A stretch of 64,000 nucleotides of DNA from Podarcis gaigeae (taxonomy: Eukaryota), in assembly GCA_964106915.2 (NCBI GenBank), contig OZ066916.1, one strand, 5' to 3'. A program made the translations under genes and the position numbers. Of the stretch, positions 9,601 through 64,000 are shown one piece after another. Positions within the stretch are counted from its first letter, which is position 1. Each line of letters starts with the position of its first letter. The notes under the pieces are model-generated. The model did not search any database. It worked only from the letters and a program-made list of their open reading frames with translations, and was not told the origin of the DNA.

Positions 9601-12600
9601 TTAGGATTCTGGAAGTTAGGCTACTGGACATACTGACTTCCAGTGAAATTAAAAACATTTTCAGGTTCTGCCCCTATCCCATTTCATCCAGTTCCCAGCT
9701 GCCACACTATTGATACTTCAGTATTTCTTTCTGAATATGTAAACTCCTGCACAAACACAAACAGAATAAAGTTCCGTACGCAATTTAAAGCAGAAGTTGT
9801 TTACCTTCTCATGCAGAGGGAATTTCCTCCTGAACTCTCTCTCTTCCTCCTCCTCTTCACTGAGGCCACTCCCGTGGCTCTTGGTTCTGTATCTGTAAAG
9901 ACTGTTCTTCTGTTCCTCCTCTTCCTGGGCCTGGCGCTCTTGTTCATCCCATTCATTTATAATTACCTAAGAAATAGAATGCAAACAAACAAAAGCCCAC
10001 TCATCTTGAGAAACCCATAAGAGACTTGTGCATATAAAGCCCACATGTGTCACACAGTAAACATATGGTGGCGTGAGGCCACTTGTATGTTGAAGCCTAG
10101 TCAAACAGGCTTTGTTTTCTGCTCTGTTTTTGTGGCAAGAAAAAAAAGCCCAGAGTTGGAGCCTGTAGGCTTGCTTTTATACTGGTTGCTCTAAAGCTGT
10201 GACCCCTCTTTCCAGTGAGCATTAAGCCAGTCACCTTTCTCTCTCCCAAGGGTGTCAAGATTTATTTTTCACAGATAGTTTTTGGAAGATGTTTTTGCAG
10301 CCATTTAGTCTTATTGCCGGGTTTTCTTGATTGATTTATTTTTATCAGTTTTGAAACGCTTTGTGCAACCAGAAAAGCAGTCTATAAACAACTGAGATCC
10401 AACCTGCTGCATTTTATCAGAGATAAACAAAGGAAAAATCCACGCACACAATGGGGTTTTTTCTTGGCTCTTTCCCTCCCTGAGGCTCTCAGAATAGCTG
10501 CTTGTGAGGATCAAAGGACCTTCTGGAATGGCATTGTGAGGAACCAGGGCTGCAGCAGGACAGGGAAACCAGGAGAACTCTGGAGCTGCCTTGCACAAGT
10601 AGAAGCATATTTCTACTTGTGGGAGGTATTTCTCTATTAAAAAAATAGAGCAACAGTTCCTAGAGTGGCCTGCTTTCACTTGCCAAATGCGTCTACGTAA
10701 CATTTTAAGTTAAGTTTCCAAAGATGTCCCCTCCTGGCCAGAGCAATAAGGAGAGAATGAAGGTAGAGGCTCAAAAAATGTAGCTGCTTAAATAGCACCA
10801 CCATACCTGGCACAAATGCCTAAATAGCTGCAGAGATTTGTGGTCCAGTTCTCCCTTGGACAGCACGTGGCAATGGAGAAACAACAAAGCATTCACCAGC
10901 AGCTGCTCCTGGGTGAGGCATACCCTCTGCTCCCCATCAGCATCCTCAGAGGAGTATTTCAGAGACAGCCTCTTAAGGCCATGAAGGACGTCCAGAGCGT
11001 TCACAGAGCACAAGGCATCCGCGTGGGAAAGGTAACAGGGGAAAGTGGCGCTGACGGAAGGAAACGACAGCAGAGAGGCAACCAGAGTGCCAAGCTTGGC
11101 TGGGCAGACAAAACTGCTGAACATCGTCCTATGGACTTCAGAAGCCACAAGCCTTAGGCCATGCTGCATCTGCAAAATGGCAGCTTGCAGTGGGACGACT
11201 GCATCAGGGAAGGCGGCATAGTCCTCTGCCAACCGTTTCCTGAACTGATGGTGCGACTGCTGCCAGGCTGCCTCTTCACTGAGGACGTTTTGCACCATCT
11301 GGAGAGACTGAGACTTATCCAAATGGAGTAACTGCAGCAGGCGGGTCACGAGATCCTGGACTTTTGAAGTCTGGGCAATGCTGCTGACATACTGATGAAC
11401 TTCCTTGTACAATGACTCATACGAAGGAGCCTGTGGTCTATAGGCTTGCTTTTGGCTGAGGCTGGCAATCTGGTCCTTCAGCTTCTGGATTCTTTGGCAT
11501 AACATCCTGAGAGAGGATAAGTTGCAAAAGGTCAAAGGTCAGGGTCACCCAACGATTATTAGATGAAAGCCGCCTTCAAGAGCAGAACAAATTATTTTGC
11601 TGTCATGATGAAATCTAAGTGCCACCCTGACTATTTATATAGCTTCACTTTTCTTTGCCACAAGAAACTCAGGCAACTCTGTATAGGTCTAGGTACACTG
11701 GACGAAAGCAAGCTTTTCAAATTGTGTCCAGATGCATGGGGACCAAATGGTAAGAGCCACACACCTGTTCTTGCAATCCACCCACCCCTGCCTCAAATAA
11801 TTTATCACCCAAACGGCAAACTGAGAGTCAAGAAAACAAGAATCCTGTAGTTAAGTGCAACTACCCAAGGCTCTGTTACAAGCAGGGATTTGAACCCACA
11901 GCCCACTGGACTATTGTGACCATTTACAATTGCCCTTTCAAATTTGGGAACAGGAGGTAAACATTGCAACATTCCAAAGCCACAGGGAATCTTGAAGTTA
12001 CCTAATGTGAGGATGACTGTGATGGCTGATGGCTTCATCTTCCAGATCTTTCCCTGTGCGTAACTGAGTTGATAGATTGTGTGTCTTCCATTCACATTCT
12101 AGATGGTGCAGCTGAAGGCGTCAAAAAACAAAAAACCATGCATGTTTCATTCAAGATAAAACTCTGCCACCACTCCAATTGGGTGGAGGAGGAGCTATTC
12201 TTGTGTACTGAGAATTTACAGATCCTTCTGTATGTTGTAAGTCTACAGCAAGGCTGTTACGTCATGACAGGTAAATGGAACCTCAAAGTCTAGAAACAGT
12301 GGGCTGTCTCCAATGTTGTCATGTTTGGGCAAGGACTTATGCTTGCATAAATGAATTTGGCCCCCTCCCCACACACCCAAAACTGTTCTTGGCATTCCCA
12401 AAGCCCTCTGGAGCAGATTGGGAAGGGGTATAGGGAGAGGGAGGGGAAGTCCTTGCACAAATGGGATGATTTTGTTGGATACACCACCACTACCCCAGTT
12501 ACCTCTGAATACCCATGACTAGTGACCATCACTGTCTAGGGAGCTGATCTCCAGCAATACACAGACGGGCACAGATTCCTCACCTGTGCTCAATCTGCAT

Positions 12601-21600: not shown

Positions 21601-24600
21601 GTTCTTGGCTTTTTGGTATTAATCAGGCTCCTTTCAACGTAGCTCTTTTTCTCACGGTCCAGAAGCAGTATTGCCCTGTAATCACAACACAACAAACCCA
21701 CATGGATATCATTTAAGTTATGTCAATAGTATATCAAAATCCTGTTAAGAGGAAGCTAACAACCCACAAATTGAATAGAGAATTTATAATCTGCATCAGA
21801 CGAGCAAAACAGGAGGAAAGAATTCTGACTACAGCAGTGGGTAATGGCAGAAGATGCATGAATATTCTGAACGATTTATGTAAAAATGAGTTTCCTTGTG
21901 AAATAAAGGTTTTGATGTAACTGTACGCTTAGATTTTGGATTATCAGTGAGCATAAGGGTACCTGACTTTTTCTAGTTTGTACATTACACCAGCCTTCAT
22001 CAACCTGGTGCCCTTGAGTTGTTCTGGACTACAACTCCTATCAGCCCCAGCACAGCATAGCTGTGGCTGATGGGAACTGTAGTCCAAAACTTCTTAAGGG
22101 CACCAGGTTAGTGAAAGCTGCCTTACAACTTGCCTTCCAAAAGAAAACAGAGCCAGGGATTGCTTGGTTGTTGTTTTTAGCAGTTTAAGTGGGGGGGTGG
22201 GGGTGTCTGTGACAATTATAGACTATCAACCAACTTAAAAAGGGAAAGACATTATTATAGAATGTGGAAATGACAAACTAACTTTTCTAATCAAAATAAC
22301 AGAACGAAGGTGGATACCAATTGGGCCTCCACATGTTGCTGGAAATACGACACCCATCATGCCTGGCCATCGGCCATATGGGGAGAGTTGGGAGACCAAA
22401 AACATCTGAAGGGCCACAGGGTTTCCCCATCCCAGAAATAGCACATGTGTGACTGAACTCACCGATTTGAAAGTGATTTCAGCAGGATAAGCAGCTGATC
22501 CGAGTGTTCTTCTGCTTCAAAGTCCACTGAATTGCTAATGATATCCAAACACTGCATGTTCCATCTGGGATCCATAGGAATCACATGCTCATCTGTTTTG
22601 ATAGATGAACAACAAGGAAAACTCACGTTTGTTTTCATTATAAACATTTTCCAACTCCCTCAATCCAAGAAATATTGCATGAACAGGATAACACCTAACA
22701 CATGTTCACTGCGTGTGTATCTGAAGAAGTGTGCATGCACACGAAAGCTCATACCAAGAACTAACTTAGTTGGTCTTTAAGGTGCTACTGGAAGAAATTT
22801 TATTTGTTTTGACTATGGCAGACCAACACGGCTACCTATCTGTAACTGGAACTATGGAAGGCACCACATTGAGCCGCATGAAATGGAAGTCCATCAACCA
22901 GTGTATCTGAAGAAGTGTGCATGCACACGAAAGCTCATACCAAGAACTAACTTAGTTGGTCTTTAAGGTGCTACTGGAAGAAATTTTTTTTTGTTTTGAC
23001 ATGTTCACTGCGTAAACGAGAGATTTGTTTAAATGGGAACGAACGTGGGGCAGGTTCCAATATGCAATTTACTGCATCTTATTTTACGCAGAGTAGCATT
23101 TTCTAAGCCCAATGAAAGGTTTTTTTTAAAAAAAACAAAACAAAATACAGCCCACTCAGTTCTGTTGCAAGCTACGTTTCACTCCCCATAACCTCCTCAA
23201 TATTGCAAATCAATCTTCACTGTATCAAAAACACAGGAAGAGAAAACACACACGCAGCCAAGAGAGAAAGAAGACATCTTACCGGTCATATTTGGTTGCA
23301 GCAACTTTATTACATTACTGATCGCACCTGAGAGGGGACTGAAGTAAAAATTATTCAGAGATGCCGCACCGGCTTCCAGCTGAGTATACACTGAATCTGT
23401 AGAAAGAAGACGACCTGTGAATTCATGCCTTTCTAAGCTTATTATTTTTATTTATATGCTGGTAAGAATTCTTACTCTCCCTTCCTCGTCAGGGCAGGTT
23501 GCAGCAATAGCACAATGAAGAAAACAGATAGAGCAATTACAATTATAAAACGAGTGAAACAAAACAGAACAGTGTAATTTCAATTAAACGTGCTGGGTCC
23601 CACGAATCAAAACACCTGGACTGCCAAAGGATTCCGTTGCGATCCAATCCCAAAGCCCCTTCCACCCCATGCATAAGGACCAAGAACTCCTGTGCATATA
23701 TTGGGGGGGGGGCTACTTCCTATTAGCTGCAGCTCCTTACACATCAGGTGACGTGCTGAAAGTCCAGCAACCTGAATGAGTGGGGTATTCATGGGGCAGC
23801 TGTGAGAAGAAAGCCAACCCCTGCAGAGAATGCAGTCAATTAATCAAGATAAAGCTGAATTGGTATCAACATATGAAATCAGTTGTGAGCTAGGGAAACC
23901 CAGCCAGATGGGTATGGTTATTATTATCAGAGGCCAAGAAGAAGCTGCAGGCCACAGAGCCAAGAAATTCCAGTTTTGGGGTTGAGAGTCTAATCAATTA
24001 TTATTATTTTTGGCCATGAGACACTATTTCCTTTCACTCACTTATTGCACACACTATTCTGGTGACGCTGTGCTTTTGACTTCCTCCATCTCTCAAGCAT
24101 AGGATCGTGCTGCATGATTCTCTTCCACCACCACAAACATTCAGATTAGTCTTGCTTAAGCAGCAAGAGTCAACACTTACCAGGCACTTGTGGCAAATTC
24201 TTTTTTAACTGATTAAGCCACCCAACTCTCAACGTCCAGTCTTGATTCGTTGCTTTCTCTATGAATAACTTAACGGCTGCAGAAAGGACCTCCATGCCGT
24301 CTGCCCAAGAGGCACTAGCTTCCACTGCACCAAATTTGAGGCAGTCTGGATTAGGAGAGTGCAGGATTTTCTCAAAGTCATGTATAGTGAGAGGCAGCGT
24401 CCTGAAACGAGAGGTCATTGTAAGAAGATCATACCTATGCAAAGAACAAACCATCTATACAATTTCCAAAGGCCTAGAGGAGATTTAACCTCTAAACATG
24501 TTAGAAGTAACCATGGTGTGCTGCCTTAACTCTGAGTAAAATCCCAGCTGGACACTGAAACCATGCTTTCAAACTATTGCCACGTCCAGAATTGACGCTT

Positions 24601-27600
24601 TACAGTATTCCATTTTTCCAACATGAACTATTAAAAAATGTGGTAACACCCACATTTTATGTGATCTTTCACATGATGTAAGACATATCTGGAAATCTGT
24701 GGGACCTAATGGAAGTTCAATGCTCATTTCCATGTTAACTGCTTCCAGAAAAACAACAGCAACTGTGCACCACACCATTAACCTGGAATATCTCAATAGT
24801 TTTGAGCTGTAATTTCCCTGCCGTTTTCATGTGCTGAAATCTAGGAGAGTAGGTAGTCCATCATACAGTTCCCCTCCCCCCAACATTTTCATGGGTGAAC
24901 AATGGGGGAACTGAAGCATGTATGCATATAGAGGGGGGTGAAATGCCCAATGACACCCGTGACGTCCCGCCCACTGGTGAGAATGACTTTTAGCATGACA
25001 TGGTGGTATATCCATCAAAAAGCCACGGTTCCATAACGCAACAGGTAATGCAGTGTGAAAGGAATGTTAGAAACCAGTAGAGCAGGGCTAGCATTATAAC
25101 CAAAAGAGCAACACAATAAACCCCACATTTGAAAGCAGCTTAAGCTTCGCAGGTATAGGGAATGAGAGCTGCTTGCTACCTTGTAAGCAAGGAGAGTGGA
25201 GGCAGGAAAACGGCCTTAACTATGGTAGCCCAGTGCAGATGTAACTGCTAACGTTGCTCACTTGTTTACATAGAGGGGCAGGCAAAAGGCTGCTCACCAA
25301 TTAACCTGGAACAGTTCACTCTTATATTTCCAGAGGGATAGCAACACCTTGTGCTCACCTGCTGTTTCTCAGATTCAGCCTGTTCAGGCAGTAAGCCAGG
25401 ACCTGGCCATCGTGATGAACCATAGAAAGCAGAGAGTCTTCAGCTGCAAACAAAGCACTGGATGCAGAATCTGGCCACAATCCTAAGGCAAGGAGGGAAG
25501 CACCCCTCGTTTCCTCTGAATCCAAGACTGAAACATGCTTCATTATCAAGTCCAGCATATGCTAGTATATCAGGAGAGGCAAAAGGAGAAGATTAGGTTC
25601 TTCAACTGGGAAAAACAACAACAGTAGTCTTCTTTCTGTAACATTTTTCTCAGGCATGGAAAACAATTAAAATGTAGCAGTTGGTTTGAAAAGACAGATA
25701 TATACATGGTCTCTAATTCTTGATTGCTCAGACTTTGAACTGTCTCTCACTGATTTTGCAAAAGTTGACTCTCTAGCACAAACACTTGATGAGCACATTT
25801 CCAACGGAGGAAGACTTACCTTTTGATTGTCTCCTGACTGTTGTGAACTGACGTAGATGTCCCAACACGCTTTATAGAAGCTCTTTGCTAAACCGAATCC
25901 TCGGCGCAACTGCTGCACGATCAGCGTTGCAGCATTAATCAAAGCAGATAGAGTGTAAGAGGAACCTGAGAAGGAAAAATTAACATTACAACCCACCAAG
26001 CACCTTTGTAGAATGCCTAGGAATTTAACCATTTTTTTTGCTTTTCCCCTTTTTCAAACCACCTACCTGAGCTAACTTCCGTATTATAAATCTGAAATCA
26101 TAATCAAAATTTCCCAATTCATTCTCTCTCTCAGATGGTCTCTAACACAATCACTAAATGGAAGTTATTCTCTTTAGCGCTTGCCAAGTTTATTATGCAT
26201 GCTTATCTCACCTGCTATGCTTTCCTTAGCTTCTGTATGCAGAGCAACGAGCTCATCACATATGCTGCTTCCAAACAAGCCCATTCCATGAAGCAGCAGC
26301 TTCACATCGTGAAGATCCAATGAATCACTCTCTCCAGGAACGTAGATCTCAATTCCACGATTCCGCATGGCTCGGGATATTTCGCCGTGTGATGGATCCA
26401 TCGAAAGGAAAAGCCTTTTTAAAGTTTCAATACACATAAGAGAGTATGGTTATTTAAGTTACCCATCCAGTATGTAATCTTACACTGCTGCTCCTGGGGT
26501 GGAGCGAGCGAGGAAGAGGTCACACTACAGCCTTGCAATTAGGCACTTGCCTGCAATGTTTAGCGATCAAGGTTATCACCTTGGTAAGAGCAATACCAAC
26601 AGTACATTTCTAAGCTGAGTTTCTATTAGAGGGGTACTTGGTTTGTCTGGGTCTTCCCTATGCACAAAGTTTTTTTTAAAAAATGCTTATTGCACCCCTG
26701 AACTGCCTCCTCTCCACCACCAGGGAACTCTGCCTTGGGAGAAAAGGGAACTAACCACACTGTTCTACTGTCTTGGCTAGGTGAACACAGAGGCATGTTG
26801 TGGCTGCTACTTTCATGGCTCCCTCCTCTCCTTATCCTACTTAGAATCAAAGAATTGTAGAGTTGGAAGGGACCCTGAGGATCACTGATTCCAGCCCCCT
26901 GCAGTGAAGGAATATGCAACTGTCCCTATATACAGGGATCAAGCCTGCAACCTTGGCATTATCAACACCGCACTCTAACCAACCAACCTCCCCAACCTGC
27001 TTTATTAAACTTGCTGGACACCCAAATAGCAAATGCTCTCTAGGCTTTATACAGAAAAGGAGGAAATGATTTTTTAAAAAAACACAAGAATCCAGTAACA
27101 ATCTAAAGGCAATAATTAAGCAGAGAATGAAAACGTATGTGTGTCCGTGCGTGCCTGCAAATACACATGCAGTTCAGAGAAGGTGGAGAGACAAGCATTC
27201 GTGCATCACAATGCTTCGCTGCTCAGCAAAGGAAGACAAATGACCTTGTTGTAAAAAAAAAGGGGGGGTGCTGAGAGAAAACTATCAAGCAATATATCAC
27301 TTTGTTGACCCAGCTGAGCGATGATCAAACCTACACTTATTTTCAAGGCTGCAGTAGTGATACCTTAAAGAGACGGTGTTCCCACCCCAGTGCATACTGC
27401 AACTCTCAAAGCATAATCCAACAACACACTCCAATAAGCACAAAGAATGTCAGCGCACCTGAAATTTGGATGCGGTGTGATAGTGGGGGTTACACCATCG
27501 ATCACTCCTCTTTCACTCATGGTGAGGACTCCTCCAGGTTCAAGCAGAGCATTCAAGCGGTCCAGCACAGAAGGACTACACACAAGAAGTAAAGGAACAA

Positions 27601-30600: not shown

Positions 30601-32007
30601 TACCCAATGTACCAGGAGTTTAATCTATCTCTAACACATCCTTAGCACGTGAATGGTGATAAAACGACATGAGGTCCCTTCAAATCCTGCACCTGCTTAA
30701 CTGAAATGCTAATTCAAGGCCTTGGAGGAAAGTAGATAATCTTAAATAGAAGTCATTAAGTGTTTCAAATAATGTGGGAAAAGGTACCCAAAAAAATTCA
30801 GTAAAATTTGTGTTTAAGATCCAAGAATGGTCTAACATATCCATACTTGTAAAACAGAAAAGACTAATAGGATTAAGCACATTTTTCATGCTCCTTACCT
30901 TCTCCTTGTCTGTATTTGTTCTCATTCTTTCCCCGTATATCAAGAACATGTGTTGGCCTGGATCGTAACTGCCAGGTGACTGGTCAACAAGCATCAGCTG
31001 ACACCATCGGAAAAGGTCACGCAGATTAAACTCCCAAGGTCCACCTTTATGCCCCCACTTCTTCTCAATCATAACTTCTTGATCAACCTGAATAACGTAC
31101 CAGTTCAAAAGATTAAAAACTCAGACGTGTTTCAGCTCATGGTAGATTATTAAAACGCCATTGCACAAGAAAGCATTCATCGCGCCAAGCATTCAACTTA
31201 ATTTACTGCTCTTCTAAGCTACCACCACTCTTTACCGTCCATTCAAAATCTTTATGGAATGCTCTTGTTCCAGAATAACTGGGGAAACCTAAACACATAC
31301 AACATGCAGTTGTCTTACCTTGGAAACACATGTATGATTATATGCCTACTTGCTAGGGGGAAAGCCTCAAAGAAACTTTTATGTGAACTCAGACGTAGTA
31401 AGCCTCAGCCACACAAATGGAACATGCCATAGGAAGAAAAAAAGGGAAGTTCTGTCCGACATATTAGGCAACAAAAAATGAAATACAAACCCAGTCTGCA
31501 ATGGCTGTTATCTGTGGAGCCCAGCTAGTTTACATGCCACTGCAACTCCAGAGTTGAAAATGACTACAAATGAAGTTTGTCTCAATACATGTTCGGATGA
31601 AAACTGTGACCAGCTTTTCACATACCGTATTTTTCTCTCTATAACACGCAGATTTTTTCTCCTAAAAAGGAAGGGGAAATGTCTGTGTGTGTTATTGAGC
31701 GAATGTGGGGGGGGGGGGTGTCCCTGGAGCCGACTAGGGGAGCGCAGGAACAAAAATCAGCAAAAATCAAATCGCGCGTTGCATCGGAGAAGGGAAACCT
31801 GAAAAGAGGAAGTTGCTGCTTTCCTGCATTCTGCCTCAGGGTCTTACTGCCCACCCTCTTGTGTTTCATTGCTGTGTTTGCCCAAACGGAACAAAGAGCA
31901 GGCAAATCCCCTCCCCTCCAGGCAAGCAGAGGGGAAAGCAGAGCGTCCTTCTCTCTAATTCCTCTCCGTGCTCTGGCTGTGCTCGCAGGCAGCCAGAAAA
32001 CATGCAG

Positions 32008-38000: not shown

Positions 38001-41000
38001 CTGGCCAACACTGGCATGTGACCCTCGTGCTGAAAAGGTCTCCCATTACTGATATAAGCAGAGGGACACCCAGAGAGAATAAGTAGGTGATGGAGTTGGT
38101 GAACAAATATCTCTGATATTTACCTATGTCATTCTGTTTGGCAAAGCAGAGTCCTGGATGAAGATTATGGTTTACAATTTGCATTAAATCCATACGGTTG
38201 TTACTTTGCGGACACCATATTTCTGTAAATCTATTACGCAAGGCAGGCGACAGCTATGGGCAAGAAAATATTAAGTGCAGTTATTATGAAGGGAACTGCT
38301 CAGAGGAAAATTTAAGAATCCTCAAAGAGGGTTACTGGGATAAAAAGAGAAAACAGAAGAATTATAAAACGAGGGAAAACATATTGCTATAAATAATGTG
38401 TAAGAGAGTATCAAAAAGCACAATAGGTTAGAATAGTGTGTGTCAAAGAACAAAACTGCATAAAAATGAGTTTTACTTTTTTAAAATGAATGTTTTATTA
38501 GACCTAATTTATCCTTAGAAAAACGATTTACTCATACAAACATACTTGCAGCTTAATAGTCTTGATATTTTATGACATTCTCAGAGGAGAATGACATTAA
38601 TTCCTGCCCCTGAAATTCCTAATAGTCTTATAATATGATTTACTACAGGATCCCAAACCAACCCACACTTCTTTATGCTGCATTTTCTTCATCATCACTA
38701 ATTTTATTACCGTATTTTGCGCACGATTGGACGCACCGGACCATAGGACACACCTAGTTTTTTGGAGGGGAAATAAAGGGGGAAAAAATCCCTTTATTTC
38801 CCCCCCAAAAGCAGGTCAGGGAAACCGAACCAGGTCGAGGAACAGCGGGATAGTGGCGCTGCGCCTCCCTGCTGTCCCCCGAGCTTGTGGGGCTGGCTGA
38901 TGTCTGCCTGGCGTGCGGGGCGCTCTGCTTCAGCGGGCCCCACCTGCCAGGCAGCAGGCTGCTATCCGCAGCGTGGGGAGCCCTGCGGGGAACTCCTGCA
39001 GGGCTCCCCACGCTGCGGATGTGTTCCCGAAGTGCCGGGCGCTCTGCTTTCAGGGCGCCCGACACTCCGGGAAGCAGGCTGCTATCCGCAGCGTGGGGAG
39101 CCCTGCGGGGAACTCCTGCAGGGCTCCCCACGCTGCGGATGTTTGCCTGGCGCGAGGGGCGCTCTGCTTCAGGGCGCCCTACCCGGCAGGCAGCAGGCTG
39201 CTATCCGCAGCATGGGGAGCCCTGCGGGGAACTCCTGCAAGGCTCCCCACGCTGCGGATGTGTTCCCGAAGCGCCGGGTGCTCTGCTTTCAGGGCGCCCG
39301 ACACTCCGGGAAGCAGGCTGCTATCCGCAGCCTAGACACGGCTAGCGGAACGCTAATCCCGAAGCTTGGGGCGTGCGGAGCTCAGCGCGCCCCAAGCTTC
39401 TGGGTGCCGGCAAGGTCTAGACGGCTAGCGGAGACCTTGCCGGCACTCAGAAGCTTGGGGCACGCTGAGCTCCGCACACCCCAAGCTTCGGGATTAATGC
39501 AGCGCTCCGCTAGCCGTGGGAGAGCTGGGTCTCCCACGGCTAGCGGATAGCTTCCTGAAGCCTGGAGAGCGAGAGGGGTCGGTGCGCACCGACCCCTCTC
39601 ACTCTCCAGGCTTCAGCGAAAGCCTGCATTCGCTCCATAGGATGCACACACATTTTCCCTTGCTTTTTAGGAAGGAAAAATGCGTCCTATGGTGCGAAAA
39701 ATACGGTAATCTCAACCATTTCCACATTTTTCCGATTAATTCTATCTATCTAGGAAATAACACATTTACTCAGTTCCAACAATCAAACAATCAACAATCA
39801 AATTAGCTGTCAGAGCTCCATGTGGAGCTAGGTCGGGGCAGGGAATCTTTTTTCAGTCTGATGGCCACCTTCCCCTGCAAAGGATCACTATGTGGTGAAA
39901 CAAATGAGATATGAATTTATACTGAAACAGCTTTTCCTAACCGTATAATATTATTTTGGTACTCTTTACTCCTTGAAATGTAACCTACTTGACTTGAAAG
40001 GCCTGGTAGTAAGAGCTTTCCTGTCTCTTCCTCCCTGTAGTAATTAGGTCATAAATAAAATAACTGGGAGTGTGAATGTGTGTGGTCTTTCTTACAGGTA
40101 AGGGCATGGGGCTCCCAAGCAGCTGTAGCCTGCGAAGGACAGCCGTGTGATAAGGAAAATGTAACTATCAAAGAGCCTGGGGTCCGGGAAAGGTAGGGTG
40201 TGGGACTGGTTGCAATGCCTTACAAGCTTCTAGAAAAACCCTAAGACTAAGTCGGAATAGGCATTTTTTTCATTCCTAAAACCGCAGGTAATTGAAAGTG
40301 GCGGCCAGCACAGAACGGCATTTTCTTACATTACCTCTTTCTTCCCAAAGTCGCCGCCAGGATTCATTGTGGCTAAAATGCGAAACTTCTTTCCTGCAGT
40401 CAGCAGTTCTACTTCATTGTCCTCACTGGCTTTTTCAGCCAACACTAGCATCTTTTCAGTTTCAAGGACGCTGAAATAAAACCACGTTCTCAGTATTTGC
40501 TCTCGTTAAATTTCCAAATATCCATACCAAACACTAGAGACTTGCCTAATCGACAGAAGCTTTGCAACTCTTGTTGTTTAGAAGAGCAGCAAGAATCAGA
40601 AGAAGCCAGGGAAAAGTTAAGATTTGTCCAATTTGCATTTGTGAATGACACGCCAAGGCAACAGACTAAAAAATGTCCAGTTTTCAAGTGCATACCTATT
40701 TAGTCTTTCTAGAACAGAATCATCCGCCAATGAAATCTCATCCATGAGAAAAAAGCCATCCTCTCTCATTGCTAAGACAAGGGCTCCATCATGCCATTCA
40801 AACAGCCTAGAACCATCAAACTCCTGTTTGAAAGAAAAAGGGAAAGTCTGATCAAGTGTGTGTGTGTACATACATACATACATACATACATACATTTACA
40901 GACACGGACTTGGTGGATTTTTCAAGCTCTCAATTATATCAGGCACCATAATGCCAACTTACCTCATCCTTTGATCTCTGCCTGACGGGTCGCAGTCCAC

Positions 41001-44000
41001 CCAGGAAGTCAGAGGTCTCCATGTGCAAGTGACAGTTCACAGAATGTAATTTCCGACCAGCCAATGCTGCAAATATCTGACAAATAGTAGTTTTGCCACA
41101 CCTGCATAACAAAAAGTTTGCAGTCAATTAAACTCCAGTGACTTGTCTGTTGCTCTACGCAAAAAATAAACAAAACTAATAATGAATATATTGAAGACTG
41201 GTTTACCCTGTGTCTCCAACCAGAAGTATAGGTTCACCAAACTCTAATGCTCGGCCTGCCAAAACGGCAAGCCTTGTCATCCCTTGAGTCCACACAATGT
41301 GACTGAATTCATCGCCCATTATAGATGTCCACCTAGATGCTTTAGCTGGTTCAAAGTGGTAATGGGGTTGGGGAAGGAAACAAACAAAACAAACAAAAAC
41401 AAATTAATTAGCTTTAGCCAAACATTAAATCTTCTTTTATTATTGTTATCGTTTTTCAAATTTACCCATTTGCTTCTTTACGCTTTCTTCTGAGAAGAGG
41501 CGCTGAGGATGCAGCTTTCTCTTAAAGTGTTTTTCAATGACTGTTTGGATAACGTCAACTTCTTCTTGTTTCCTGACCCTTCCTGCCAGAAGCATAAATC
41601 CTAGTAACAGAAAGACAACAGTTTATCAAGATGTTCACCGCTTTTGAAAAATGGTTGAAATGTGGCTACTGAACTGGACACAATGGCTGTGTAAGTTGAA
41701 AAGAAACGAGTGGAGACTCACCGTCATTTGCTAAATGCTGAAGCCAGTCATACTCCTTCTCCATCTGCTCTGCTAATCGGTACCTTTCAGCCCAGCGAAA
41801 GAGATCCCGGAGGGTAATGAAACCATGCTTGCCTGCAAACACTGAGGAACCTCTGCGATAAGACTAGATTTAAAAGGACATAAAAGTAAGCATTCATGAT
41901 CCAACACAATTTTCTGTACCCACAACTGCATTTTCCACTACTCTTGCAATGCCTACCCTCCTTACCACCAAACCTCCTAGTTGTCTTCTTAGCATTTATT
42001 TGTCCAAATTTCACCAATATTTCAGTAATGACCATCAGTCCCCTGAGCCAAACAAATTCTGGTAGGTTGCTACGTAACTCAACAATAACCCCCCCCCCAA
42101 AAAAAAACCCCCAGAGCCAATAAATGTGTGCGCCTTGAGTATAAGACACCAAACTACAACTTGGGCTCAAGTGACTTCTCTATTCTTTTCTCATTAAGAG
42201 AAAAAAGATTACTGTCCATACCTGCAACTCCAGCATGACTTTGACAAGTTTACTGCAGTACGAAGGTGGAAGGTGGCATCTTTTGTGCAGGATGGTTTCT
42301 AGCTCTGTACTTGGTAGCTCATCAAAATGCAGCTCCACAAATCTGTTCCTGAAAGCTCTGGACAATACCTTAAGACACACACACACAAACCACCTGTCAA
42401 GAGTTAATCTACTGAGAAATTCACACACACTGAAAACTTAAAACGAGTTTCCCACCCTCAGTCAGCTAGTATTTCATGGCCACTGAACATGTTCATACTC
42501 AAAGGGTTTGCCCTCTTAATTCCCCCCCCCCCCCGAAGATTTCTGTGCACGTCTGCAAACGGTGGGGTTCTCCCAACTCTGTTGACACCTCTCGCTTGTG
42601 TTTGGATGGTACCATTTTGGATTGGCAACTTGTAGACTGATTTCACTATTGGTTCTGGATATGCTACAAAGACTAGAGCGTTTGACTAGGAGTGGCGAAG
42701 ACTCAGGTTCAACTCACCACTTAGTTATAAAGCTCACTTGGTGATCCTAGGCCAGTCTTTCACTCAAACTATTACTCAGCCTAACCTACTGCACAGGACT
42801 AAGGTGAAGGAGAGAAATCACATATGCCACCATAAGGTCCTTGAAGAAATAGTGGAGTGTACGTGTGAATAGCATATCAAAAGAAAGCCAGCTTCATCTG
42901 AGGAAACTATGTATGTACCTTCCTGCCTCCATAGAGCCCTGGAGGATTCTGTGTAGCAAAGAGCATGAATCTTGGGTGAGCTTTGACTGTTTCTTGGGTT
43001 TCTGTTATGAACAGCTCTCTGTTGTCATCCAATAATCTGTTCAGGGCCTCCAAAACATCAGTGGGTGCCAGGTTGAGTTCATCCAGGATTATCCAGTAGC
43101 CCTTTCGCATAGCATCAATGAGGACACCTATGTAGCATTTACAGAAAAAAAGAAATAAATGAGTTGCCCACTTGAGGCAAGCCAGGCAAGCATCTGTTTG
43201 AGCAAGTAGGAGAGCTGGCTGGCAAGGAAACACCGAGTGATTTGAGGTAATAATCAGAATCCTACCTTCCTTAAATATCAGCTTCCCAGATGGATCTGAA
43301 GTATAACAGCCAATGTATTCTTGAATGTCAGTATGTTCATGATTGTTAATCCTAACACAATGGTTCCCAGTTGCAGCAGCCACCCAGCGTATTAAACTGG
43401 TTTTACCAATGGATGTGTCTCCTTGAATCAACACTGGATAGGTTCTTAAAGAATTAGAAAACAGCCAAGTTATATGTTGTGTTCTATGGTGTTGAATTAT
43501 TATTATTACTACTACTTCTACTGTTGTTGTTGTTGTTGTTGTAAGAAGCTACAGTAGTACCTACGTTTAAGAACAACCCTGTTTACGAACTATTTGGTTT
43601 ACGAACTCTGCAAAACTGGAAGGCCTCATTAGGGAAAGCGCGCCTTGGTTTAAGAATGGTTTCGGTTTAAGAATGGACTTCCGGAACGGATTAAGTTCGT
43701 AAACTGAGGTACCACTGTACCTGATTGGCTTCAAGGTCTTTTTACAACATATATTGATTAAGAGCACTTCCAGAAATGAGACTTGGGCTTCCTGTTGTGT
43801 TGTAAGATAAAAAAAGAAAAGTTCGCTGAAGTTCAGAATAAACAAGTCAAAGCTAGGGAAAACCGACAACAGTATTTGTGCTTCTTAATTGTCGTGTTAT
43901 ACGCCTCCTCCAGCAAATGTCTGAAACTCAAACTACATGTTTATTGTAGTCGTTCGCGCCCATGGAGCAGAGACACTTTTGTGTATTGTGCATACTTGTT

Positions 44001-53000: not shown

Positions 53001-56000
53001 AAATCAGGCTCAGTACGATCGGACAAGATGAAAATCAAACCAGCCTCAGCGGATCTGATAACAGATAAAAGGTGAATCTGGTGGCCCCTGCACACCATTA
53101 CTAAACAGATGACTTGAACATGTTGAAAATTAGAGACCGGCTGAAACATATAAGAGAACTTACCCTTTTTTTTCCAGGTACACAAAATGTCAAAAATTTC
53201 ATCCCACAGCTACATAGCACCGCTCATTCCAACATCTCTCCCTGCCCCAAGACTGAACATTCCCTTTTCCTTGTTCTACTTCCTTGTACTTGTCATTACC
53301 CCATCCATGGAATCCCACACCCCATTTCATGTTGCTCTATGTACTTTTCTTTTTGCCATATGGTTCTCTATTTTTGAATGCAGTAACTCTTATGAATGGG
53401 GTCCATGCACACTTCTACTAAATACAAGATCTGAAGTCATGAGTGAAAAAAATGATTTGTTGATGCAGTTGCCAACAGCAATTTGCAGAATTATTAGACA
53501 CTCACCCCCCTAGGAGATCTGCAGTATCACTCTGCTGATTCATGTTGATAACCCTCAAACGGTGCCCTTGAAGAAATAAAACACAGAAAAGACACTGAAG
53601 CACTTCTCAAACCTTTTCTAGAATCCTGGTCAAAGTCCCCACATTATACTACATTTTACCTGTAATGTGGGCCAGGTATTGAACAGTAGATGTTTTGCCT
53701 GTCCCTGTTTCACCCACCAACAACACAGGCTCTCCTTTGTCGACACACACAGCCAGCTGCTCAATTAATACGGATGATGGACGTGTGGGAGCAAAGGTCT
53801 GCTTTTTTCTGCCAATACATGAAAGGGTAAAATCTTCTGTTAGCAATACTCTAATGCTATGTGCTAAGCATCTCCAAGTGCATTTGATTCACTAATTCTA
53901 CAAATATAATCTCTCTCTATTACCAGGTTTCAAAAAAACACCTCAATGAGACATTAAAAATGCTGGCACGGAATTTTAAAGTTACAAGCACATTTAAAAA
54001 GTGCACTATTGTACATCAACTTGTAAGCCATCTGGTTGAAGGGTGGCTTAGTAATTTTAAAATATAAACAAACAAACAAACAAATCAATACCTTTGCACA
54101 AGAAGCGCATGAATTTGCTTCCGTAAGAGCTGGACTCTTCCCACAGAGACCTCTTGCTCCCTTATTGCAATTTCTGGTTTGTAAAGTTGACAGTAGTATT
54201 CAGTCTAGAGTAAATAAATAAAGAGCATACATACTGAACTCAGCTTACTAAAAAGAAACACATGATGTAGTCCTTTGCCATATGCAGTTGTGCAATACAG
54301 TGGTACCTCGGATTAAGTACTTAATTCGTTCCGGAGGTCTGTTCTTAACCTGAAACTGTTCTTATCCTGAAGCACCACTTTAGCTAATGGGGCCTCCTGC
54401 TGCTGCCACGCCGCCTGAGTACGATTTCTGTTCTCATCCTGAAACAAAGTTCTTAACCCGAGGTACTATTTCTGGGTTAGCGGAGTCTGTAACCTGAAGT
54501 GTATGTAACCTGAGGTACCACTGTACAACTGAAAGTTAAGACACAAGTCCAGTTTGCACATCACAGTAAGGCATAGTAAATAGTTTATTGTGAATGTGCC
54601 TTTCTGGGTTGTATGTCCCCCCCCCCCTCATGATAGCAGGGAGCAGACAGACCACTGTCCCTGCTTAGCATTATGTCCAAACCAGAGGCCATGATTTGCT
54701 TTGCTTCAAACCATGATCAGCAAATCAAGAACAACCTTAGCTACAGTAATTTGCCGGGAACAAAACAAACTATGGTCCTTCATTTGAATGTAACACTTGC
54801 TTCCTCCAAGTGTGAGTGGACAGGATTCAAATGACCAAGATCACCATGGTTACAGTGAACTATAAACTATGGTGATGTGAGAACAAGGCCTTTGGGCTGT
54901 ATTCAGTTGTTACATGAACAGAAGTCAGCTCATGCAACCAAACTTTCTCTTTCACTCCTCCTGCTGCTGCTGCTGCTCCCCCCTGCAGCCACTTTTCCCC
55001 TCCAAAGGGTTGGGTGCCTCCTAGTGAAGCCTATGGTTGCAGCAGGAGGGAAGCTGCTGCTTCAAATCAGGCAATGGAATCTTGCACCAGTGGCGATGTG
55101 CAGGTGCATGATCCCTACATCCAATTTCAGCCATGTTACACGTGGCTCTCTTCTTTCAGAAGAAAAACAAGAGTGGACATTATCCAGTTAGTTCATTTAA
55201 TTATTTCTTGGCAGTGAAGGAGACATGAAACTATTTTTTTCCTCCTTGACAAAAGGGGTATTTATTACACAATGCAGTATGTGTGCGAACTCTTCCTTAT
55301 GTCTACCTTATGCTTGGAAATGTTCAGTTGGCTTCCAATGATCTCTGCCATCTTCAGTCTACTTCCTTGCTTGGACAGCATAGCTGTGAAACAATCCAAC
55401 GCCTGTCAAAGTAGAGTGGCAGGAGGGAGAGACAGAGAGACAGACAGAGAGAGAGAATTCAAGCTAATTTAATATTTAATCAGAGGTTCTACTTTTCTTC
55501 CATACTTGAGTTCACTGTAGTCAAAATATACAACTGAGCTTCATGCAATGTATCGCTAGTATGTCTCCACGAGGAAAACAAGAGGACGAGCCAATTCAGA
55601 CATTTCAGCTCTCTTCATAATGGAATTCCTGGTGTAACACCTGTGGGACCTGGCATGTCCCCAACGACAGCTGCCTCTTCCTAGTGTGATTTATGCAACC
55701 ATTCCTGTGAATCCCCCATTGTGAAGCAGCAGGTCTAGTTAGATTGACCCTCAAGGAAAATTTCCAACACCAGAACCAGCCCCCTGTTCATATTCCAAAC
55801 CTGGTTTTCACATTTTAAGGAATAGGTCAACATCACTCTAAAAAACAAGGAACAGTTTGACACGTACCTCATGAAAAATATTCAGTGCAGTAGAGGAAGA
55901 AGAACTATCAAAGTTGTAAGCGATCCTGTTGCACCAATTCAGCAAGTCCCTAACACAAGAAAATAAGTGATGTGAAGCAGCTCAACAGTAGTCCTTCATT

Positions 56001-63820: not shown

Positions 63821-64000
63821 CCTTAGAAGTACAACAAAAAGGGATGAAAAAGATTTTTCAAACCTCCATAGAAATAGGATAAAGCTAGGAGGAAGAGCTG
63901 AAGAAGAATGTGGAAAGCAAGAATGGGAGGGAAAGGTACTTTACACTTAGTGTAAAATAAACATTTCTCCTGTTCCCCCTTTATTCATTCTACTATGAGA

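What the first reader, a model, noticed from the sequence alone, without database searches (positions are those of the whole stretch)
22700..23013. Tandem hammerhead-ribozyme retroelement (retrozyme-like) in MDN1 intron 50, predicting a 186-nt self-excising and possibly circular RNA
Seen in sequence: a 284-bp non-coding insertion between perfect 15-bp TSDs (ACATGTTCACTGCGT), made of 1.5 copies of a 186-nt unit. Each copy begins GTAT-CTGAAGA-A-GTGTGCATGCACAC-GAAA-GCTC-ATAC. This gives the hammerhead core CUGANGA/GAAA/UH, a palindromic helix II, a 4-bp helix I (GUAU:AUAC) and only a palindromic AGCU as helix III. The two copies are identical except in a T-run, so the insertion is young. Established knowledge: minimal type I hammerheads with a palindromic helix III occur in Penelope-like element terminal repeats and in metazoan non-LTR retrozymes, and cleave efficiently as dimers formed by tandem copies. 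Inference: a + strand transcript would cut after 22750 and 22936 and release a 186-nt monomer that could circularise and be retrotransposed by a Penelope RT/GIY-YIG protein in trans. The more-than-unit-length insert fits reverse transcription of a circular or multimeric template. I cannot tell whether this lizard family is already catalogued.
Basis: partly seen in the sequence, partly recalled or inferred. Interest (0 to 1): 0.85.

Follow-up and report, generated by a model that had tools for sequence, protein, structure and literature searches.

The report
Penelope-type hammerhead mini-retroelement, recent insertion
A 284-bp piece of a very abundant lizard "jumping gene" family that carries two copies of a tiny self-cutting RNA motif landed recently in an intron of the MDN1 gene; it is a real but ordinary member of a known class, and the RNA data available give no sign of the proposed RNA circle.

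Summary
Perfect 15-bp target-site duplications (22700-22714 and 22999-23013) flank a 284-bp insert of 1.5 copies of a 186-nt unit. Each copy carries a complete minimal type I hammerhead: 2 hits in the window, 0 in 300 shuffles. Rfam finds nothing, even at E<=10.

Public reads place it in a very large repeat family, with thousands of distinct contigs in two related species. One relative has an empty site and another has the filled site, so the insertion is young. The architecture matches Penelope-like element (PLE) hammerheads. It also parallels the 5' module of the Anolis Poseidon element PAc. The 186-nt unit is a rare variant of its family: its last 53 nt are 40-400 times rarer than the rest, and in two contigs they run on into other sequence.

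MDN1 lies on the minus strand, so the hammerheads are antisense to the host gene. And raw RNA reads from a relative show no read ends at the predicted cut sites, no coverage of the unit junction and no strand bias, so nothing supports a 186-nt linear or circular RNA.

Verdict: a new member of a known kind, a non-autonomous PLE derivative ("non-LTR retrozyme"). The scan has already noted many minimal hammerheads elsewhere in this genome.

The parts
22700..22714 (.). Left target-site duplication, ACATGTTCACTGCGT
   Evidence: Perfect 15-nt direct repeat with 22999-23013. The contig of organism E carries the target once and lacks the insert.
22715..22900 (+). Full 186-nt unit: hammerhead, 97 nt of common family sequence, and a 53-nt rare segment
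   Evidence: Direct repeat with 186-nt spacing. BLAST of the unit against the window finds only itself and the partial copy. GC is 42% and all six frames contain stops.
22717..22754 (+). Minimal type I hammerhead 1. Predicted cut after C22750.
   Evidence: Helix I is GUAU:AUAC. The core is CUGAAGA with an unpaired A22728. Helix II is GUGUG/CACAC with a CAUG loop. GAAA follows, and AGCU stands in place of helix III. Descriptor hit with 0 hits in 300 shuffles. No family variant of 10% or more lies inside 22717-22749.
22819..22847 (+). AC-rich segment (…CAGACCAACACGGCTACC…) followed by the family's main 3' boundary at 22846-22848
   Evidence: In all four runs, loose ends lie behind 22846-22848 with diverse continuations. 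Depth collapses after about 22869. This parallels the internal RT start in an AC-rich stem-loop of Anolis PAc (PMC11167929).
22848..22900 (+). 53-nt segment that closes the 186-nt unit. It is rare in the family.
   Evidence: Summed contig depth in bin 22870-22897 is about 2,000 (X11) and 14,000 (X9), against 0.5-1.3 million for the rest of the element. Raw RNA reads give 0 there. Contigs X16 record 13 and X9 record 21 cover it and then run on into unlike sequence.
22901..22998 (+). Partial second copy (first 98 nt of the unit). It ends 35 nt short of the family's main 3' boundary.
   Evidence: 97-98% identical to 22715-22812, differing only in the T-run. Both copies share A at 22795/22981 where nearly all family copies read G.
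22903..22940 (+). Minimal type I hammerhead 2. Predicted cut after C22936.
   Evidence: Identical to hammerhead 1.
22999..23013 (.). Right target-site duplication
   Evidence: The right-hand alignment of the empty-site contig of organism E starts exactly at 22999.
22463..22592 (-). Context: an MDN1 exon on the minus strand. Its acceptor AG lies 107 nt from the insertion.
   Evidence: The exon is bounded by …caaaacag| and |gtgagt on the minus strand. An RNA contig of X16 covers 22462-22593 only, so it is spliced. Further upstream exons on the same strand match the midasin AAA6 end, AAA_lid_7 and AAA_5.

Best explanation
This is a recent insertion of a short non-coding derivative of a Penelope-like retroelement (PLE). 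The recent literature calls this class of element a non-LTR retrozyme.

The unit consists of the PLE-type minimal hammerhead followed by about 150 nt. In the one lizard PLE studied biochemically (Anolis Poseidon, PAc), the corresponding region holds the protein-binding region and the internal start sites for reverse transcription.

Inferred mechanism:
1. A PLE reverse transcriptase/GIY-YIG endonuclease supplied in trans made staggered cuts 15 bp apart.
2. It began cDNA synthesis at an internal site of the element RNA, equivalent to 22812. That is 35 nt before the family's usual end at 22847, which matches the 30-40-nt 'tail' spacing of PLEs.
3. It copied back to the 5' edge of the hammerhead.
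4. It then continued on a second unit. That unit was either the next one of a multimeric transcript or a second RNA reached by template jumping.
5. Synthesis stopped again at the hammerhead's 5' edge.

The result is a 1.5-copy partial tandem with two hammerheads, antisense in an MDN1 intron.

Shown: the anatomy, the TSD, the hammerhead motif, family abundance, the empty and filled sites, and the orientation. Inferred: the PLE enzyme, the internal initiation, and the template route. The hammerheads are best read as a conserved cis-module inherited from the PLE. Whether they cut in vivo is open.
For: Anatomy and TSD.

Hammerhead: it is complete and non-random. It matches each trait listed for metazoan PLE minimal hammerheads in PMC4209133: a long helix II with an unpaired 5' nucleotide, a 4-5-bp helix I, and no helix III or a 2-nt palindromic insert.

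Family:
- 6,239 contigs (X11) and 11,864 contigs (X9) of two related species lie on the element. Summed depth is 0.5-1.3 million against 12-13 on the flanks.
- A recurrent 3' boundary lies at 22846-48, with diverse flanks.
- A recurrent 5' or junction point lies at 22713-17, equivalent to 22899-22903.
- Many head-to-tail 'go-back' joints return to that point, with 1-16 extra letters between the joined parts.
- Head-to-head (opposite-strand) joints are also seen. Both composite forms are described for PLEs in PMC8557442.

Youth: a 1,773-nt single-copy contig of organism E maps 22454-22674 and 22999-23260, with 46 letters in place of 324. A contig of organism D runs 22450-22739 with 0 differences.

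Parallels with PAc:
- The hammerhead has the same build, with an ATG inside helix II.
- In PAc, RT starts internally in an AC-rich stem-loop 82-89 nt after the cut site. Here the family boundary lies 97 nt after the cut, just past an AC-rich stretch.
- In PAc, the two start sites are separated by a 30-40-nt tail. Here the spacing is 35 nt.
- The minimal RNA template in PAc reaches +172 from the ATG. Here the unit reaches +166 from the ATG in helix II.

The 2026 preprint 10.64898/2026.07.22.740005 reports such elements in 4 of 5 reptile genomes, with a mean consensus of 176 bp, and derives them from PLE terminal repeats.
Against: - No PLE ORF lies in the window, and no physical link between this unit and an RT/GIY-YIG ORF was shown.
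- A search of 1.84 billion proteins with the unit's 46-aa ORF found only spurious repetitive proteins.
- By eye, the unit shows no similarity to PAc outside the hammerhead core. It was not aligned, because the PAc sequence has no reference in the tools. The positional parallels are therefore analogies between different PLE lineages.
- Evidence for a recurrent 'tail-less' end at 22812 in other copies is weak. The one loose end at 22810 has a fairly uniform continuation.
- The target is not the AT-rich ATT site preferred by PAc.
- Copy-number figures come from summed contig depths, which the tool warns are not copy numbers. A 64-kb window holding a single locus suggests fewer or clustered copies.
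Confidence: 0.8

Rival explanations
1. One reading: an active retrozyme. A + strand transcript of the locus, or of a tandem master copy, self-cleaves through a dimeric hammerhead after C22750 and C22936. The 186-nt monomer is ligated into a circle, and the circle is the template that a PLE enzyme copies by rolling reverse transcription.
For: The two hammerheads are complete and 186 nt apart. AGCU allows the double-hammerhead helix III. The insert is seamless and longer than one unit. Metazoan retrozymes of 170-400 nt do give abundant circles in invertebrates and amphibians (PMC7229834). The hammerhead core shows no variant of 10% or more across thousands of family contigs, while the next 97 nt have nine such sites.
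Against: From raw RNA reads of organism E:
- No pile of read starts or ends lies at the cut sites.
- Depth is zero on 22870-22897.
- Only 3 of 1168 reads fit wholly inside the 1.5-copy reference.
- Both orientations are about equal.

Other points:
- The junction segment is rare, and in two contigs it runs on into other sequence.
- Tandem joints in relatives have many different periods and carry extra letters. That points to template jumps or adjacent insertions rather than one circular unit.
- The locus is antisense to its host gene and no promoter was shown.
- The T9 run inside each unit would stop RNA polymerase III (established knowledge).
- The minimum-energy fold traps the two helix II palindromes together, -70.3 against -54.5 kcal/mol.
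- PLE minimal hammerheads cut poorly in vitro (PMC4209133). In Anolis PAc they need the protein and are dispensable for insertion (PMC11167929).

Caveats: the RNA came from a species that lacks this locus, and standard libraries lose RNAs under 200 nt.
Confidence: 0.12
2. An ordinary SINE mobilised by a LINE (L1, CR1, L2 or Bov-B type) that happens to contain a hammerhead-like string.
For: The element is short, non-coding and highly repeated, with a 15-bp TSD as in L1-type target-primed insertion.
Against: - There is no poly(A), microsatellite or LINE-derived 3' tail. The 3' end on the hammerhead strand is T-rich, and on the other strand the A-rich run sits at the 5' end.
- No tRNA, 5S or 7SL head was found (Rfam).
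- Partial-tandem and head-to-head composites are PLE hallmarks.
- The complete hammerhead does not arise by chance.
Confidence: 0.04
3. A single-unit insertion that later became 1.5 copies by local duplication (slippage or unequal exchange).
For: The two copies are nearly identical and differ in a slippage-prone T-run.
Against: The TSD brackets the whole composite. A 98-nt repeat placed 186 nt away is not what a simple tandem duplication of an insert would give. The internal junction coincides with the family-wide junction point at the hammerhead's 5' edge, and similar head-to-tail joints occur at many other loci in relatives.
Confidence: 0.03

Closest known systems
Minimal hammerheads of Penelope-like element terminal repeats (Cervera & De la Pena 2014, PMC4209133; Lunse, Weinberg & Breaker 2017, cited in PMC6765202)
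   Same: Type I topology, the CUGANGA/GAAA/UH core, a long helix II with an unpaired nucleotide at its 5' side, a 4-bp helix I, helix III reduced to a 2-nt palindromic insert (AGCU) so that only a dimer can form it, massive copy number, and both tandem and inverted pairs.
   Different: The motif here sits in a 186-nt non-coding unit with no ORF within the insert. Linkage to an autonomous PLE was not shown.
Poseidon_Ac (PAc) of Anolis carolinensis (PMC11167929)
   Same: It is also a lizard element. The hammerhead has the same minimal build, with an ATG inside helix II. A recurrent insertion end lies 80-100 nt after the cut site, next to an AC-rich stretch. A second end lies 30-40 nt away (the 'tail'). 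The cis-module needed for insertion lies within about 170 nt after the hammerhead. No RNA-seq read ends fall at the cut site.
   Different: PAc is a 2.7-kb autonomous element. No sequence similarity outside the core was evident by eye, and it was not aligned by tool. PAc's helix II is longer (cut 29 nt from the A of the ATG, against 16 nt here). PAc targets AT-rich ATT sites.
Metazoan non-LTR retrozymes (Cervera & de la Pena 2020, PMC7229834; Li, Clavereau & Pollet 2026, bioRxiv 10.64898/2026.07.22.740005)
   Same: Non-coding 170-400-nt repeats, each with a type I hammerhead. GC is below 50%, TSDs are longer than 4 bp, and there is no LTR, PBS or PPT. They are reported in reptile genomes with a mean consensus of 176 bp and are proposed to be PLE derivatives.
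   Different: The classic examples form long arrays and give abundant circular RNA from canonical hammerheads with loop-loop contacts. Here there are only 1.5 units, the hammerhead is of the minimal PLE type, and no circle or monomer RNA was seen. TRF does not report a 1.5-copy repeat, so the TRF-first pipeline of the 2026 preprint would probably not pick up this locus.
Schistosoma Sm-alpha / Sj-alpha SINE-like elements with hammerheads
   Same: Short, very abundant non-autonomous retroposons that carry a type I hammerhead.
   Different: Those have a tRNA-like polymerase III promoter and a canonical, monomer-active hammerhead. Neither is present here.

Membership tests
Hammerhead ribozyme, minimal PLE type (min-HHR) | Conserved core CUGANGA … GAAA … UH, in type I order | tested here: met
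   CTGAAGA 22721-27, GAAA 22743-46, T22749-C22750. The same is found at +186.
Hammerhead ribozyme, minimal PLE type (min-HHR) | Long helix II with an unpaired nucleotide at its 5' side, and a short (4-5 bp) helix I | tested here: met
   A22728 is unpaired. GUGUG/CACAC gives 5 bp with a CAUG loop, and this hairpin forms in the monomer minimum-energy fold. GUAU:AUAC gives 4 bp.
Hammerhead ribozyme, minimal PLE type (min-HHR) | Helix III absent or reduced to a short palindromic insert, so that two copies are needed | tested here: met
   A15.1-GC-U16.1 reads AGCU, and two copies lie 186 nt apart.
Hammerhead ribozyme, minimal PLE type (min-HHR) | Self-cleavage at the predicted site | not testable with these tools
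   Only indirect evidence is available. Raw RNA reads of a relative show no read-end pile at 22750/51 or 22936/37. The predicted fold disfavours the active form by 16 kcal/mol.
Rfam Hammerhead families (RF00163, RF00008 and relatives) | Score at or above the family's gathering threshold | tested here: not met
   No match at gathering score, and none at E<=10 on 22600-23100. This is expected for hammerheads that lack helix III.
Penelope-like element derivative (non-autonomous) | Partial-tandem (more than unit length) insertion flanked by a TSD of variable length | tested here: met
   1.5 units between 15-bp TSDs.
Penelope-like element derivative (non-autonomous) | Family shows head-to-tail and head-to-head composites, 5' truncation, and a 30-40-nt optional 'tail' at the end | tested here: inconclusive
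   Head-to-tail and opposite-strand joints are present in relatives' contigs, and the main 3' end is at 22846-48. This copy ends 35 nt earlier. A recurrent second end at that place was not clearly shown.
Penelope-like element derivative (non-autonomous) | Sequence shared with the terminal repeat or 5' region of an autonomous RT/GIY-YIG element of the same genome | not testable with these tools
   The rest of the genome is not readable here. First-stage notes on other windows mention GIY-YIG ORFs ending in hammerheads, but these are unchecked. The protein search with the unit's ORF was uninformative.
Non-LTR retrozyme (sensu Cervera & de la Pena 2020) | Tandem non-coding repeats of about 170-400 nt, each with a type I hammerhead, and no LTR, PBS or PPT | tested here: met
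   The unit is 186 nt, with two hammerheads, stops in all frames and 42% GC. It is only 1.5 units long.
Non-LTR retrozyme (sensu Cervera & de la Pena 2020) | Expressed as monomeric linear and circular RNA | tested here: inconclusive
   No such RNA appears in one bulk RNA-seq run of a relative that lacks this locus. No RNA of the source species was available, and small RNAs are lost in such libraries.

The most novel reading that the evidence does not exclude
The 186-nt unit is a live amniote retrozyme. It would be a natural minimal Penelope template, made of the hammerhead plus the RT-binding and RT-initiation module. It would be transcribed from tandem masters, cut by a protein-assisted double hammerhead, circularised, and still inserting in this lizard lineage. 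That would make it a natural system for working out what the hammerhead does in Penelope retrotransposition.
Probability: 0.12. Interest if true: 0.6.

Novelty: new member of a known kind. Interest (0 to 1): 0.33.

Why it matters
The role of the hammerhead in Penelope-like elements is still unresolved. In vitro it is dispensable for insertion and depends on the element's protein. A young insertion that differs between closely related lizards shows the family was active recently. It consists of little more than the hammerhead plus the region which, in Anolis PAc, binds the protein and starts reverse transcription. It therefore offers a small natural substrate for testing that role.

As an annotation matter, it is one copy among thousands. 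It sits antisense in an intron 107 nt from an acceptor site, and nothing suggests an effect on MDN1.

Tried and rejected
- Rfam at gathering score and at E<=10 gave no hammerhead or other family. TRF found no array.
- A weak BLAST echo of the unit at 53320-53430 on the minus strand proved to be chance similarity when read. A third loose-pattern hit at 63898 is not a hammerhead.
- I tested whether 22848-22900 encodes the N-terminus of a PLE protein. phmmer of the 46-aa ORF (22770-22907) against 1.84 billion proteins returned three long repetitive proteins. Their matches are sums of weak repeats, and none has RT or GIY-YIG domains. The idea is neither supported nor excluded.
- The 186-nt length is a multiple of three, so I looked for a stop-free frame that would allow endless translation of a circle. 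Every frame has stops.
- A full-text search for an 18-nt string of the unit found no paper. A search for hammerheads in squamates found nothing beyond the PAc paper and the 2026 preprint. Lunse et al. 2017 is not held. The held supplement of the 2026 preprint is an oligo order form with no species list, so I could not tell whether this species or family is already catalogued.
- I did not align the unit with the Poseidon_Ac consensus, because that sequence has no reference in the tools. It was compared by eye only.
- The search of earlier findings by sequence was blank.
Full report
**1. What is in the sequence**

The repeat finder gives two direct-repeat families. One is a perfect 15-nt repeat, ACATGTTCACTGCGT, at 22700-22714 and 22999-23013. 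The other is a 96-nt repeat with 186-nt spacing, starting at 22715 and 22901.

The insert is therefore 22715-22998, 284 nt. It consists of one full 186-nt unit (22715-22900) and the first 98 nt of a second (22901-22998). The two copies differ only in the T-run, by A/T at 22802 and one extra T.

Each copy begins with GTAT-CTGAAGA-A-GTGTGCATGCACAC-GAAA-GCTC-ATAC. I scanned both strands of the window with a full structural descriptor. It requires a 4-bp helix I, CUGANGA, an optional bulge, a hairpin of at least 4 bp, GAAA, a 0/2/4-nt palindromic insert, UH, and the helix I partner. It hits exactly twice, at 22721-22750 and 22907-22936, and never in 300 dinucleotide-preserving shuffles.

Rfam finds nothing at gathering score on the whole window, and nothing at E<=10 on 22600-23100. 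Hammerheads without a helix III are outside those models. TRF reports nothing because 1.5 copies is too few. No other copy of the unit is in the window.

**2. Host gene and orientation**

The gene is on the minus strand.
- An ORF at 26177-26437 (-) matches the end of AAA6 of yeast midasin, residues 2257-2283 (E 2e-9).
- ORFs at 30683-31108 (-) and 42910-43434 (-) carry the Midasin AAA lid and AAA_5 domains.
- On the minus strand, 22592-22463 is an exon bounded by …caaaacag| and |gtgagt.
- An RNA contig of run X16 covers just 22462-22593.

The insertion is thus in an MDN1 intron, 107 nt upstream of an acceptor site. The hammerheads lie on the strand opposite to the gene, so the pre-mRNA cannot provide ribozyme-sense RNA. 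I did not test the intron number.

**3. Evidence from public reads**

The 751-nt region is held by genome-size runs of at least five coded organisms. I laid four runs on 22450-23260 at 90% likeness or better.
- X23: raw RNA-seq reads, organism E.
- X16: transcriptome-size contigs, organism E. The spliced exon contig shows that it is RNA.
- X11: genome contigs, organism E.
- X9: genome contigs, organism D.

(a) Abundance. 6,239 contigs (X11) and 11,864 contigs (X9) lie on the element. Summed depth is 0.5-1.3 million, against 12-13 on the single-copy flanks. The tool warns that this is not a copy number. Thousands of distinct contigs with different flanks still mean thousands of copies at least. 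The scan's first-stage notes list 23 hammerhead findings in other windows of this genome, which fits, though those notes are unchecked.

(b) Family shape.
- High depth covers 22702-22869 and 22898-23009.
- Bin 22870-22897 falls to about 2,000 (X11), 14,000 (X9), 106 (X16) and 0 (X23 raw RNA).
- In every run, loose ends lie behind 22846-22848 with diverse continuations. That is the family's main 3' boundary.
- Upstream of the hammerhead, most copies carry …GGATCTGGCAACTTCTGTTTCA instead of the window's …GTCCATCAACCA (agreement 0.91-0.94 in RNA reads). Other copies start at 22715-17 or 22903 with diverse flanks.
- Two contigs (X16 record 13, X9 record 21) cover the rare 22848-22899 segment and then continue into unlike sequence.

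The 186-nt unit is therefore a minor variant. Its last 53 nt probably belong to a longer parent.

(c) Composites. Contigs of organism D show many head-to-tail joints that return to 22713-17 or 22899-22903 from different upstream points: 22747, 22777, 22816, 22845-48, 22854, 22980 and others. They often carry 1-16 extra letters between the two parts. Opposite-strand joints occur near 22715-27.

(d) Age.
- A 1,773-nt single-copy contig of organism E aligns to 22454-22674 and to 22999-23260. It has 46 letters where the window has 324, so the insert is absent. The right-hand alignment begins exactly at the second TSD copy.
- The 25 nt left of the TSD are replaced by a longer unaligned stretch, so the empty site is not perfectly clean.
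- Organism D has a contig running 22450-22739 with no difference, so its site is filled.
- The flanks of organism E differ by about 3-4%.
- Both copies share A at 22795/22981 where nearly all family copies read G, so they came from one source.

(e) RNA.
- Of 1168 raw reads on the element, 1165 run on into other sequence.
- Both orientations are about equal.
- No place shows a pile of read starts or ends.
- The unit junction segment has zero depth.

This is the pattern of copies carried inside other transcripts. It gives no support for a 186-nt linear or circular RNA. It is not strong evidence against one either, because organism E lacks this locus and ordinary libraries lose RNAs under 200 nt.

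(f) Conservation. Across the family, no variant reaches 10% inside 22717-22749. C22750 is T in about 10% of copies, which still satisfies H. The next 97 nt have nine sites at 10% or more. This is suggestive of constraint but weak, because reads had to be at least 90% alike to be laid.

**4. Folding**

The monomer's fold is no more stable than shuffles (z = 0.48), though the helix II hairpin forms. In the 284-nt RNA, the minimum-energy fold (-70.3 kcal/mol) pairs the two 14-nt helix II palindromes with each other. Enforcing the two hairpins, the AGCU:AGCU helix III and one helix I gives -54.5 kcal/mol. The active double hammerhead would therefore need co-transcriptional folding or a helper.

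**5. Comparison with what is known**

Cervera & De la Pena 2014 describe the minimal hammerheads of metazoan Penelope-like elements. They list a long helix II, an unpaired base at its 5' side, a 4-5-bp helix I, no helix III or a 2-nt palindromic insert, action as dimers, low activity in vitro, massive genomic numbers, and both tandem and inverted pairs (review). Every structural trait is met here.

Craig et al. 2021 list the PLE insertion hallmarks: 5' truncation, partial tandems, adjacent inverted copies, and a 30-40-nt tail at one end.

The Anolis Poseidon element PAc is the closest studied system.
- Its hammerhead has the same minimal build (CUGAGGA, helix II containing the start ATG, GAAA-CG-UC).
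- Reverse transcription starts internally in an AC-rich stem-loop 111-118 nt into the ORF, which is 82-89 nt after the cut site.
- A second start site defines the tail.
- The RNA needed for insertion reaches to +172.
- Hammerhead mutants insert normally, and cleavage needs the protein.
- No RNA-seq reads end at the cut site.

The corresponding figures here are as follows.
- An ATG sits in helix II at 22735.
- The family boundary is at +112 to +114 from that ATG, which is 97 nt after the cut. It lies just past CAGACCAACACGGCTACC.
- This copy ends 35 nt earlier.
- The unit spans -20 to +166.

These are positional parallels between different lineages. By eye the sequences are unrelated outside the core, and I could not align them because the PAc sequence has no reference in the tools.

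Cervera & de la Pena 2020 define metazoan non-LTR retrozymes. Li, Clavereau & Pollet 2026 find them in 4 of 5 reptile genomes, with a mean consensus of 176 bp, and argue that they are non-autonomous PLE derivatives.

**6. Mechanism**

The best reading (0.8) is a non-autonomous PLE derivative inserted in trans by a PLE RT/GIY-YIG enzyme.
1. Staggered cuts 15 bp apart.
2. Internal start of cDNA synthesis at the site equivalent to 22812.
3. Copying back to the hammerhead's 5' edge.
4. Continuation on a second unit. That unit is either the next one of a multimeric transcript, which is the usual PLE model, or a second RNA reached by a template jump. The extra letters at similar joints in relatives fit a jump.

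A LINE-driven SINE (0.04) lacks any tail or polymerase III head. A later local duplication (0.03) does not fit the TSD or the family-wide junction point.

**7. Verdict**

The feature is real and correctly recognised as a Penelope/retrozyme-type hammerhead element. It is a new member of a known kind, in a genome where such elements are extremely common. The self-excising circular RNA remains a hypothesis.

The points of some interest are its youth (present or absent among close relatives) and its near-coincidence with the cis-module defined biochemically for a lizard PLE.

Noticed in passing
window 22799-22804 (minus strand): The copy-specific A at 22802 (nearly all family copies read T) creates AATAAA on the MDN1-sense strand, inside the intron about 210 nt upstream of the acceptor. 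Whether it is ever used as a poly(A) signal is unknown.
   Followed up: no
window 22675-22699: In the empty-site contig of organism E, the 25 nt just left of the target site are replaced by an unaligned stretch. Together with the insert, 46 letters stand in for 324. This small indel or divergent patch next to the insertion site was not resolved, because the letters were not shown.
   Followed up: partly
window 22810 (run X23): 94 RNA reads leave the element after 22810 into one fairly uniform sequence (agreement 0.74). This suggests a particular, well-expressed transcript in organism E in which a family copy is joined to other sequence at that point.
   Followed up: no
window 38885-39550 (+): Three overlapping ORFs of 140-221 aa with no Pfam match. 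They lie over the stretch that another first-stage note calls a hairpin-spacer array in a mariner-type MITE.
   Followed up: no
window 10774-11535 (-): A 254-aa ORF with only a sub-threshold She9/Mdm33 coiled-coil match (E 0.004). It could be a large MDN1 linker exon or a chance ORF.
   Followed up: no
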